Assembly (NCBI RefSeq): GCF_006345805.1
Contig: NW_021826734.1
Location: forward strand, 1 to 11,970
Direction: 5' to 3'
DNA length: 11,970 nt
Origin: Octopus sinensis
Lineage: Eukaryota
The notes under the pieces were generated by a model. The model was not told where the DNA came from and searched no databases. It worked only from the letters and a program-made list of their open reading frames with translations. The stretch's first letter is position 1. The number at the start of each line of letters is the position of its first letter. A program made the position numbers and the translations under genes. Shown here piece by piece: positions 1,404-1,562 of this stretch.

Positions 1404-1406
1404 AGA

Positions 1407-1480
1407 GGCCGGTTAGCTCAGTTGGTTAGTGCGTCGTGCTAATACCGCGAATGTCGTGGGTTCGAGCCCCATACTGGCCA
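1407..1480 (+). tRNA. tRNA-Ile (anticodon AAT) copy, probably a retroposed pseudogene
   Basis: Cloverleaf: acceptor GGCCGGT/ACTGGCC, D stem GCTC/GTGC (one T-T mismatch), anticodon stem TCGTG/CGCGA, loop CTAATAC (AAT at 1441-1443), T stem GTGGG/CCCAT, T loop TTCGAGC, discriminator A1480. No encoded CCA. Very close to the canonical metazoan tRNA-Ile(AAT). Confidence 0.88.
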
Positions 1481-1494
1481 TATTCTCATATTTT

Positions 1495-1562
1495 AATGGC
1501 GGTGCCCCAACATGGCCACATCTCATTAGCTGAAACTGGAAAAATCAAAAATCAAAATCAAA
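1495..1562 (+). mobile_element. LINE-derived (RTE-like) 3' tail with short tandem end repeats, fused behind the tRNA-Ile
   Basis: GGCGGTGCCCCAACATGGCCACATCTCATTAGCTGAAACTGG is homologous to the SINE tail at 444-400 (minus) and is followed by (AAAATC)x3. The RTE assignment is inferred from recalled octopus SINE tails. Confidence 0.8.

What the first reader, a model, noticed from the sequence alone, without database searches (positions are those of the whole stretch)
1404..1562. Pre-tRNA-Ile fused to a LINE-type tail: possible template-switch chimera or newborn SINE
Seen: a 74-nt near-perfect tRNA-Ile(AAT) with intact A box (1414-1425) and B box (1459-1469) and no CCA. It is followed by the trailer TATTCTCATA-TTTT (1481-1494), then directly by the retroposon tail (1495-1540) and (AAAATC)x3, all inside an (AAT)n tract. 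Established: mature tRNAs end in CCA while precursors end in a trailer plus oligo-U, and L1 makes U6/3'-end chimeras by template switching. Inference: RT started on a SINE/LINE tail and jumped onto the 3' oligo-U of a tRNA precursor. This is the step proposed for SINE birth, caught with little divergence.
Basis: partly seen in the sequence, partly recalled or inferred. Interest (0 to 1): 0.72.

Follow-up and report, generated by a model that had tools for sequence, protein, structure and literature searches.

The report
tRNA-Ile copy fused to SINE tail
A nearly intact isoleucine tRNA copy, still carrying what looks like its unprocessed 3' trailer, is joined to the short 3' end-piece that other mobile SINE-like repeats in this repeat-rich animal genome carry; it is a tidy example of a known kind of retrocopy, and whether it is a one-off or one of a family could not be tested here.

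Summary
Window 1407-1480 (+) is a tRNA-Ile(AAT) (ARAGORN; Rfam 54.3 bits against a threshold of 29). It has intact A and B boxes, no CCA, and one broken D-stem pair. A 14-nt trailer ending in TTTT follows. Then comes a ~45-nt module that matches the 3' ends of two other SINE-like elements in the window (0 of 2000 shuffles reach the score) and keeps their two small hairpins. An (AAAAATC)n run follows. The whole block lies between (AAT)n sequence, with AATAATAATAA on both sides.

The best reading is a ~157-bp block retroposed as one piece: a primary-transcript-like tRNA-Ile joined to a SINE/LINE 3' recognition module. This is the known chimeric-retrocopy or SINE head-acquisition architecture.

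- Copy number, the source tRNA gene and the orthologous empty site could not be tested, because none of the collections I could reach returned any host-genome sequence.
- "Little divergence" is not shown.
- The internal TTTT argues against this copy working as a SINE master.
- RNA ligation is a published alternative to template switching for U6/L1 chimeras.

The two rivals remain open: a copy of an existing tRNA-Ile-headed SINE family, or a resident tRNA gene with a truncated SINE inserted after it. Interest is modest.

The parts
1183..1403 (+). (AAT)n microsatellite forming the left flank. Its last 11 nt (1393-1403, AATAATAATAA) recur at 1561-1571.
   Evidence: TRF: period 3, 73.7 copies, 87% matches. 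Sequence read.
1404..1406 (+). AGA between the AAT tract and tRNA position 1. It could be a 5' leader of the primary transcript or untemplated bases.
Evidence: Read from the sequence.
1407..1480 (+). tRNA-Ile(AAT), 74 nt, without CCA. The A box is at 1414-1425 and the B box at 1459-1469. D-stem pair 12:23 is U-U (T1430).
   Evidence: ARAGORN. Rfam RF00005, 54.3 bits, E 1.2e-9. 66 of 74 positions match human tRNA-Ile(AAT), and two of the differing pairs are compensated (PMC13439101).
1481..1494 (+). Trailer TATTCTCATATTTT ending in T4. This is the layout of a tRNA gene 3' flank, or of an unprocessed Pol III transcript end. The last T may instead belong to the module (TAATGG against TAAAGG).
   Evidence: Sequence. 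The trailer is not significantly similar to the body that precedes the module in the other element (p 0.13-0.35). T-runs are listed.
1495..1539 (+). Retroposon 3' module shared with other SINE-like elements. Hairpin 1 is 1498-1517 (6 of 7 pairs kept) and hairpin 2 is 1519-1532 (4 of 5 pairs kept).
   Evidence: Alignments and shuffle test. Consensus structure of the three copies has 12 pairs, 2 of them with compensatory changes.
1540..1559 (+). A-rich short tandem repeat end of the block: (AAAAATC)2(AAAATC).
   Evidence: Sequence.
1561..1590 (+). Right flank: AATAATAATAA, then (AAC)n. It is either the candidate target-site duplication or the continuation of the interrupted microsatellite.
   Evidence: Sequence. 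The 14-nt word AATAATAATAACAA occurs at 1372 and at 1561. Inside a microsatellite this is not significant on its own.
376..612 (-). Comparator: a SINE-like element with the same 3' module (448-398) and an (A)10(TAAA)3 end.
   Evidence: Its module folds into two hairpins, z -2.7.
11130..11282 (-). Comparator: a second SINE-like 3' end with the same module (11185-11135).
   Evidence: Hairpin z -5.0.

Best explanation
Window 1404-1560 is one retroposed block, a chimeric retrocopy.

- Its 5' part copies a tRNA-Ile(AAU) primary transcript: a few leader bases, the 74-nt tRNA without CCA, and a 13-14-nt trailer ending in the oligo-U left by Pol III termination.
- Its 3' part is the ~45-nt two-hairpin end module that several SINE-like families of this genome carry. 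That module is presumably what a partner LINE reverse transcriptase recognises. A short A-rich repeat follows it.

Likely sequence of events, all inferred:
1. A LINE enzyme nicked an (AAT)n tract and primed on the A-rich repeat end of a SINE or LINE RNA.
2. It copied the module.
3. cDNA synthesis then continued on the pre-tRNA. This happened either because the enzyme jumped templates at the 5' edge of the module, or because the two RNAs had already been ligated.
4. The product was integrated, leaving AAT repeats on both sides.

Shown: the parts, their order and orientation, and that the module is a repeat. Inferred: the single-event origin, the RNA nature of the tRNA donor, and the joining mechanism. 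The block has the architecture of a minimal SINE. The T4 between promoter and tail should stop most Pol III transcripts before the tail, so this copy is more likely a dead-end chimera than a working SINE source.
For: - The tRNA is real and scores well above threshold.
- It has no CCA, and its 14-nt trailer ends in TTTT.
- The trailer is not recognisably SINE body.
- The module's homology to two other elements is significant: 0 of 2000 shuffles reach the score. The two hairpins are kept.
- Both parts are in the same orientation, and an A-rich repeat end follows the module.
- AATAATAATAA lies directly on both sides of the block, and the (AAT)n-to-(AAC)n tract reads as one microsatellite interrupted by 157 bp.
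- The SINE heads in the same window are too decayed to score as tRNA, so this head is much closer to a tRNA gene or transcript.
- No second copy exists in the window.
- Published precedents: head acquisition by template switch (PMC5729268, PMC5786205), small-RNA/LINE chimeras flanked by target-site duplications (PMC11838501, PMC6789731), and microsatellite 3' ends of RTE-type LINEs in octopus (PMC9115989, PMC6007223).
Against: - The candidate target-site duplication lies inside a microsatellite, so it proves nothing.
- The upstream (AAT)n could instead be the tail of the head-like piece at 1108-1182. The AAT words on both sides would then not mark one interrupted tract.
- The module begins at the same boundary as in another element, which a modular SINE family explains at least as well.
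- The T4 could be a later mutation. Other decayed copies here carry a TTTT.
- Copy number is unknown. The negative protein-level searches have no positive control, because the control search failed technically.
- In primates, tRNA/LINE-1 chimeras are mostly half tRNAs in antisense orientation (PMC11838501), unlike this case.
Confidence: 0.45

Rival explanations
1. The block is an ordinary, slightly decayed copy of an established multi-copy SINE family. That family would have a tRNA-Ile-derived head, a very short body, and the 3' module shared with other families of this genome. The 'trailer' would be family body sequence, and the TTTT would be a mutation private to this copy or tolerated by read-through.
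For: - The tail starts exactly at the module boundary seen in another element: TAATGGCGG against TAAAGGCGG.
- The window is packed with SINE-like elements that use the same module with different heads.
- If the host is an octopod (my recollection of these repeats, not tested), the prior is high. O. vulgaris has 1,317 SINE consensus families covering 11.7% of the genome, most of them unclassified (PMC13282606).
- A TTTT inside individual copies of other families occurs here.
- tRNA-Ile-headed SINEs exist elsewhere, for example TguSINE1 (PMC5729268).
Against: - No second copy occurs in 12 kb, although other families recur there.
- The head scores 54 bits as a tRNA and keeps every stem but one pair, whereas the SINE heads here score nothing.
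- The head-to-module spacer looks like a tRNA gene flank, with T4 11 nt after the tRNA end.
- No relative of an ORF spanning the junction was found among billions of predicted proteins. This is weak evidence, because there was no positive control.
Confidence: 0.3
2. These are two independent events. A resident tRNA-Ile(AAT) gene or pseudogene sits with its natural flank and T4 terminator, and a heavily 5'-truncated SINE or LINE copy (module plus repeat end only) later inserted immediately after the T-run, joined through the AAT microhomology.
For: - tRNA plus an 11-14-nt flank plus T4 is exactly the layout of a tRNA gene.
- The A and B boxes are intact.
- 5'-truncated insertions and microhomology at 5' junctions are common for LINE-driven insertions (general knowledge).
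- SINE density in the window is very high.
- AAT is present on both sides of the module-plus-repeat piece (TTTTAAT| ... |AATAATAAC).
Against: - It needs two coincidences: the truncation falls exactly at the module boundary, and the insertion falls exactly at the end of the terminator.
- It also leaves unexplained why a tRNA gene sits 3 nt from a 220-bp (AAT)n tract with AAT repeats resuming after the insert. One insertion into one tract is simpler.
- No target-site duplication longer than 3 nt flanks the tail piece alone.
Confidence: 0.15
3. The unit is part of a larger composite element: the head-like piece at 1108-1182, an (AAT)n linker, tRNA-Ile and the tail together. That would be a dimeric SINE-like repeat or a segmental rearrangement, or an assembly join inside the microsatellite.
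For: - The piece at 1108-1182 contains a perfect A-box consensus, TGGCGTAGTGG.
- It shares GGCGTAGT.GTT.AG with the head of the element at 11282.
- It runs directly into the (AAT)n tract.
- Long microsatellites are frequent sites of misassembly (general knowledge).
Against: - 1108-1182 does not score as tRNA, and its similarity to the other head covers only 15 nt.
- Nothing links it to the tRNA-Ile block other than the microsatellite.
- No evidence of misassembly can be obtained from the sequence alone.
Confidence: 0.07

Closest known systems
U6/LINE-1 and other small-RNA/LINE chimeric pseudogenes of mammals (PMC6789731, PMC4476161, PMC11838501)
   Same: A full-length Pol III transcript ending in its U-run is joined in sense orientation to a 5'-truncated retroelement 3' end. 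The product is integrated as one unit with an A-rich end and flanking duplications.
   Different: The small RNA here is a tRNA precursor, not U6. The 3' partner is a short structured module with a microsatellite-like end rather than L1 with poly(A). U6/L1 joining is now attributed to RtcB ligation of a 2',3'-cyclic phosphate end, which a pre-tRNA oligo-U-OH end does not have. Known primate tRNA/L1 chimeras are mostly half tRNAs in antisense orientation.
PittSINE / TguSINE1 of passerine birds (PMC5729268)
   Same: A new tRNA head was placed on an existing LINE-derived SINE tail, proposed to occur by template switching during target-primed reverse transcription. TguSINE1 itself has a tRNA-Ile head.
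   Different: Those are families with many copies and a phylogenetic record. They have no terminator-like T-run between head and tail. Here only one copy is known.
Model of SINE birth by adding a small-RNA head to a LINE 3' region or bipartite LINE (Okada and Hamada 1997 as cited in PMC5786205; Kojima 2018)
   Same: The architecture is a Pol III promoter head plus a LINE-recognised 3' end.
   Different: The model concerns the founding copy of a successful family. Nothing here shows that this copy founded anything, and the LINE that owns the module was not identified.
Cephalopod and octopus tRNA-derived SINEs (OK, OR1, OR2; Ceph-SINEs; the many unclassified SINE families of O. vulgaris, PMC13282606, PMC4758252)
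   Same: The genomic setting matches: SINE-dense, microsatellite-rich, different heads on a common 3' module, and short-repeat ends like those of RTE-type LINEs (PMC9115989).
   Different: The host assignment rests on my memory of these repeats and was not tested.

Membership tests
tRNA gene (Rfam RF00005; eukaryotic tRNA-Ile-AAU) | Cloverleaf sequence and structure score above the curated threshold | tested here: met
   54.3 bits against a gathering score of 29, full-length match. ARAGORN calls Ile(aat).
tRNA gene (Rfam RF00005; eukaryotic tRNA-Ile-AAU) | All four stems fully paired, as in functional copies | tested here: not met
   D-stem pair 12:23 is U-U (alignment). Human tRNA-Ile(AAT) has A at position 23 (PMC13439101).
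tRNA gene (Rfam RF00005; eukaryotic tRNA-Ile-AAU) | Internal A and B boxes, and a T4 or longer terminator shortly downstream | tested here: met
   A box at 1414-1425, B box at 1459-1469, TTTT at 1491-1494, judged against consensus motifs from general knowledge.
tRNA gene (Rfam RF00005; eukaryotic tRNA-Ile-AAU) | Expressed, processed and aminoacylated | not testable with these tools
   No expression data are available.
SINE | 5' head derived from a Pol III-transcribed small RNA with an internal promoter | tested here: met
   tRNA-Ile head with both boxes.
SINE | 3' region shared with a partner LINE | tested here: inconclusive
   The module is shared with two other SINE-like elements. No LINE carrying it is in the window or was retrievable.
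SINE | Many dispersed copies sharing the same head-body-tail junctions | tested here: inconclusive
   No second copy in the window. The junction pattern is absent from the metagenome collection. No relative of the junction ORF was found. None of the collections searched returned host-genome sequence, and the positive control failed.
SINE | Transcribable by Pol III from head through tail, with no internal terminator | tested here: not met
   TTTT at 1491-1494 lies between head and module. The next T4 on this strand is at 1881. The feature could be a later mutation.
Chimeric retrocopy (small RNA / retroelement 3' end) | 5' part is a complete small Pol III RNA ending at its own 3' U-run | tested here: met
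   The tRNA runs from position 1 to 73, followed by a trailer ending in T3-4. That the trailer comes from the tRNA locus is inferred. It is not significantly SINE-like.
Chimeric retrocopy (small RNA / retroelement 3' end) | 3' part is a 5'-truncated retroelement end in the same orientation with an A-rich terminus | tested here: met
   Module homology reached by 0 of 2000 shuffles. (AAAAATC)n end.
Chimeric retrocopy (small RNA / retroelement 3' end) | [quoted passage not shown] | tested here: inconclusive
   AATAATAATAA occurs at 1393-1403 and at 1561-1571, but both lie in microsatellite sequence.
Chimeric retrocopy (small RNA / retroelement 3' end) | Single insertion event shown by an empty orthologous or allelic site | not testable with these tools
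   No host or related genome could be reached.

The most novel reading that the evidence does not exclude
This locus is the founding or near-founding copy of a new SINE lineage, caught at birth. A complete, unprocessed tRNA-Ile transcript (leader, trailer and oligo-U) was coupled in one retroposition event to the minimal two-hairpin recognition module of an active LINE/SINE system. It is still at very low copy number and needs only the loss of the T-run to become an efficient Pol III-driven SINE.
Probability: 0.1. Interest if true: 0.6.

Novelty: new member of a known kind. Interest (0 to 1): 0.35.

Why it matters
If this is a single-event chimera, it is a clean natural example, outside mammals, of the step that joins a Pol III small RNA to a LINE-recognised tail. 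Here the donor tRNA appears to have been the unprocessed precursor rather than the mature tRNA. That bears on how SINE heads are acquired, and on whether the joining happens by template jump or by RNA ligation.

It also marks out a ~45-nt two-hairpin module as the probable minimal recognition element of an unidentified LINE in this genome.

If it is only one copy of an existing family, or a tRNA gene next to a truncated SINE, it is routine repeat annotation.

Tried and rejected
1. Reaching the host genome by exact protein look-up. Twelve window ORFs, including one spanning the junction, were looked up and none is on record.

2. Protein homology search with the 56-aa junction ORF. No candidate was found.

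3. Tc1-like transposase search, to identify the host and fetch loci.
- The best hits were only about 67% identical, on ~1.2-kb marine-metagenome or Logan contigs.
- The named hits were spiders, a frog, an amphipod and similar.
- The loci fetched share only the Tc1 element with the window.

4. Positive control with concatenated SINE-ORF translations. It failed technically: 8000 word candidates were collected and none scored. The negative results in items 2 and 5 therefore have no control.

5. Exhaustive representative search with the junction ORF. The single hit, P0121, is a tandem-repeat ORF with no DNA similarity to the window, so it is spurious.

6. DNA pattern scans.
- The junction pattern gave 0 hits in metagenome contigs.
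- The tail pattern gave 35 hits, all chance matches of 20-26 nt.
- Two abundant window SINE motifs gave 0 hits in genome contigs and in viral contigs.

7. Searching paper texts for the repeat sequences gave nothing.

8. Idea rejected: that the 14-nt 'trailer' is really SINE body. The alignment anchored at the module boundary is not better than shuffles (p 0.13-0.35).

9. Idea rejected: that the head-like piece at 1108-1182 and the tail at 1495 onwards are two halves of one SINE split by an insertion. Both carry the start of the module, and 1108-1182 is not tRNA-like by Rfam.

10. The permissive Rfam scan of the window returned only microsatellite look-alikes of miRNA models.

11. Mapping the mariner remnant, to define a pre-insertion sequence. 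Only a weak HTH_48 hit was obtained. The element is internally deleted, so it does not delimit the insertion.

Full report
**Setting.** The 11,970-bp window is AT-rich, microsatellite-laden animal DNA. It holds (AC)n, (AT)n, (TATG)n and a 221-bp (AAT)n tract. It is packed with short interspersed repeats and with degraded Tc1-like and mariner-like transposons. I recognise several of the repeats from memory as octopod SINEs, but I could not test that, so the host assignment is only a lead. If it is right, the background is a genome with about 11.7% SINEs in 1,317 consensus families and 7.5% simple repeats (PMC13282606).

- ARAGORN finds one tRNA in the window, tRNA-Ile(AAT), at 1407-1480 on the + strand.
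- Rfam's tRNA model matches it end to end at 54.3 bits against a gathering score of 29 (E 1.2e-9).
There is no CCA.
- The one structural defect is a U-U at D-stem pair 12:23.
- Against human tRNA-Ile(AAT), whose sequence is printed in PMC13439101, 66 of 74 positions agree. Of the 8 differences, 28/42 and 50/64 are compensated pairs and so probably belong to a functional lineage-specific gene. T23 breaks the D stem, and C38, T45 and G59 lie in loops. Decay since leaving a functional gene is therefore between 1 and 4 substitutions. 'Little divergence' cannot be claimed without the host's own gene.
- By contrast, the tRNA-like heads of the other SINE-like elements in the window do not score as tRNA even at E<=10.

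**The trailer.** Directly after the discriminator base comes TATTCTCATATTTT (1481-1494). That is the layout of a tRNA gene's 3' flank with its Pol III terminator, or equivalently of an unprocessed primary transcript. I tested whether these 14 nt might instead be SINE body, by aligning them, anchored at the module boundary, to the sequence that precedes the module in the element on the minus strand at 612-376. The match is no better than shuffles (p 0.13-0.35).

**The tail is a real repeat module.**
- Window 1495-1545 aligns with the 3' ends of two other SINE-like elements, minus strand 448-398 and 11185-11135. Each gives local score 44, while 2000 dinucleotide shuffles give a mean of 18 and a maximum of 37.
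- The three copies are about 70% identical pairwise, so the module is old and diversified, and the donor of this copy is not in the window.
- RNAalifold on the three gives two small hairpins of 12 pairs. Two pairs have compensatory changes, and this copy keeps 6 of 7 and 4 of 5 pairs. With three sequences that is only suggestive, but it resembles the structured 3' ends that 'stringent' LINE reverse transcriptases recognise (general knowledge).
- After the module, each element ends in a different A-rich short repeat: (AAAAATC)2(AAAATC) here and (A)10(TAAA)3 at 398-376. Such microsatellite-like ends are typical of RTE-type LINEs and their SINEs, including in octopus (PMC9115989, PMC6007223).
- No LINE carrying the module is in the window, so 'LINE-type' remains an inference.

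**Context of the block.**
- Upstream lies (AAT)73 (1183-1403), ending ...AATAATAATAA, then AGA, then the tRNA.
- Downstream of the short-repeat end the sequence resumes AATAATAATAA, followed by (AAC)n.
- The simplest reading is one (AAT)n(AAC)n tract interrupted by a 157-bp insertion, with AATAATAATAA as the target-site duplication and AGA as a 5' leader or untemplated bases. Because this is microsatellite sequence, the duplication has no statistical weight.
- The upstream tract might instead be the tail of the head-like piece at 1108-1182. That piece carries a perfect A-box consensus but is not tRNA-like by Rfam.

**Most likely mechanism.**
- A LINE enzyme primed on the A-rich repeat end of a SINE or LINE RNA at a nick in the AAT tract and copied the module. 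cDNA synthesis then continued on a tRNA-Ile precursor, up to its 5' leader.
- The junction could have been made by a template jump, as proposed for SINE head acquisition (PMC5729268; PMC5786205), or by ligation of the two RNAs beforehand. Since 2019 the experimentally supported route for those chimeras is RtcB ligation of U6's cyclic-phosphate end to a 5'-OH L1 fragment (PMC6789731).
- A pre-tRNA ending in U-OH is not an obvious RtcB substrate. That leaves template switching favoured here, but it is not shown.
- Known primate tRNA/LINE-1 chimeras are mostly half tRNAs in antisense orientation (PMC11838501). A full-length, sense, precursor-like tRNA is a somewhat unusual member of the class.

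**Is it a newborn SINE?**
- The block has SINE architecture. However, TTTT at 1491-1494 sits between the promoter and the tail, and the next T4 on this strand is at 1881.
- By general knowledge T4 is a Pol III terminator in animals, so most transcripts from this copy would be plain pre-tRNA and would lack the tail. This argues for a dead-end chimera. The argument is weakened because individual decayed copies of other families in the window also carry a TTTT.
- The module starts at the same boundary as in the 612-376 element (TAATGGCGG against TAAAGGCGG). A random jump or truncation would hit that point only by luck. A modular family, or a structural hot spot at the base of hairpin 1, explains it better.

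**What could not be done.** The decisive tests need the host genome: copy number of the junction, the donor gene with this leader and trailer, and the orthologous empty site. No collection I could reach returned any host sequence.
- Exact look-ups of window ORFs failed.
- The junction ORF has no relatives. The single hit was a spurious tandem-repeat protein.
- A junction pattern and three SINE patterns found nothing real in the metagenome, prokaryotic-genome and viral collections.
- My positive control for the protein route failed technically. The negatives therefore say little about copy number.

**Verdict.** The features are real and their arrangement is most simply explained as a chimeric retrocopy of a tRNA-Ile precursor on a SINE/LINE 3' module, inserted as one piece (confidence about 0.45). 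The rivals are:
- a copy of an existing tRNA-Ile-headed SINE family (about 0.3);
- a resident tRNA gene with an adjacent truncated SINE (about 0.15);
- a larger composite element or an assembly join (about 0.07).

It is a new member of a known kind and of modest interest unless genome-wide data show that it is a founder.

Noticed in passing
window 376-612 (minus strand): A SINE-like element. It has an A/B-box-like head (not tRNA by Rfam at E<=10), a body of about 95 nt, the two-hairpin 3' module at 448-398, and an (A)10(TAAA)3 end.
   Followed up: partly
window 11130-11282 (minus strand): A second SINE-like 3' end with the same module. The module region folds into a long hairpin far more stable than shuffles (z -5.0). 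Its head starts GGCGTAGTCGTTGAG, like the piece at 1116.
   Followed up: partly
window 1108-1182 (+): A head-like piece containing the exact A-box consensus TGGCGTAGTGG and running directly into (AAT)73. It is not tRNA-like by Rfam. 1069-1076 and 1111-1118 form an 8-bp inverted repeat. Its relation to the tRNA-Ile block is unresolved.
   Followed up: partly
window 4645-4854 and 4893-5070 (+), and by eye 7340-7480: Tandem and dispersed copies of another interspersed repeat family (66% identity between the first two). The 27-nt word CTGGGGTCGATGTAATCGACTTAATCC is identical in both.
   Followed up: partly
window 5540-5880 (+): Another SINE-like element with a tRNA-like start (GGATGGCGCAGTGG...GAGCTCGAATCCC) and long spurious ORFs. 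It contains AATGGCGGTG, the first 10 nt of the unit's tail, and then diverges.
   Followed up: no
window 2922-3020: A perfect 40-bp inverted repeat with a 19-nt spacer (AAATATTTTCGTCGCTTTGAGACCGCGACCTGTTCACTGA and its complement). It could be a foldback or MITE-like structure, and scores below threshold against several miRNA models.
   Followed up: partly
window 2257-2499: A 243-bp MITE-like element with 51-nt terminal inverted repeats (92% identity) starting CAGTTG..., flanked by TA on both sides, as for Tc1/mariner-type elements.
   Followed up: partly
window ~620-1040 and ~1790-2250 (minus strand): An internally deleted mariner-like transposon remnant. It gives a weak HTH_48 hit at about 1916-2047 (E 0.0014) and has a C-terminal ORF with PHPTFSPDLVPSGYYVF. 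The tRNA-Ile block and the (AAT)n tract lie between its two parts.
   Followed up: partly
window 8808-9810 (+); loci L036-L040: A frameshifted Tc1-like transposase remnant. It is 70-80% identical at the nucleotide level to ~1.3-kb contigs from marine metagenomes and to a locus in a frog genome assembly, which suggests a widely spread, possibly horizontally transferred, Tc1 family.
   Followed up: partly
locus L041 (ENA metagenome contig), gene at 9718-11718: A 666-aa ORF made of ~57-aa tandem repeats on a eukaryote-like contig. It was the only hit of the junction ORF in the representative search. It has no DNA similarity to the window, so I treated it as a chance match.
   Followed up: yes
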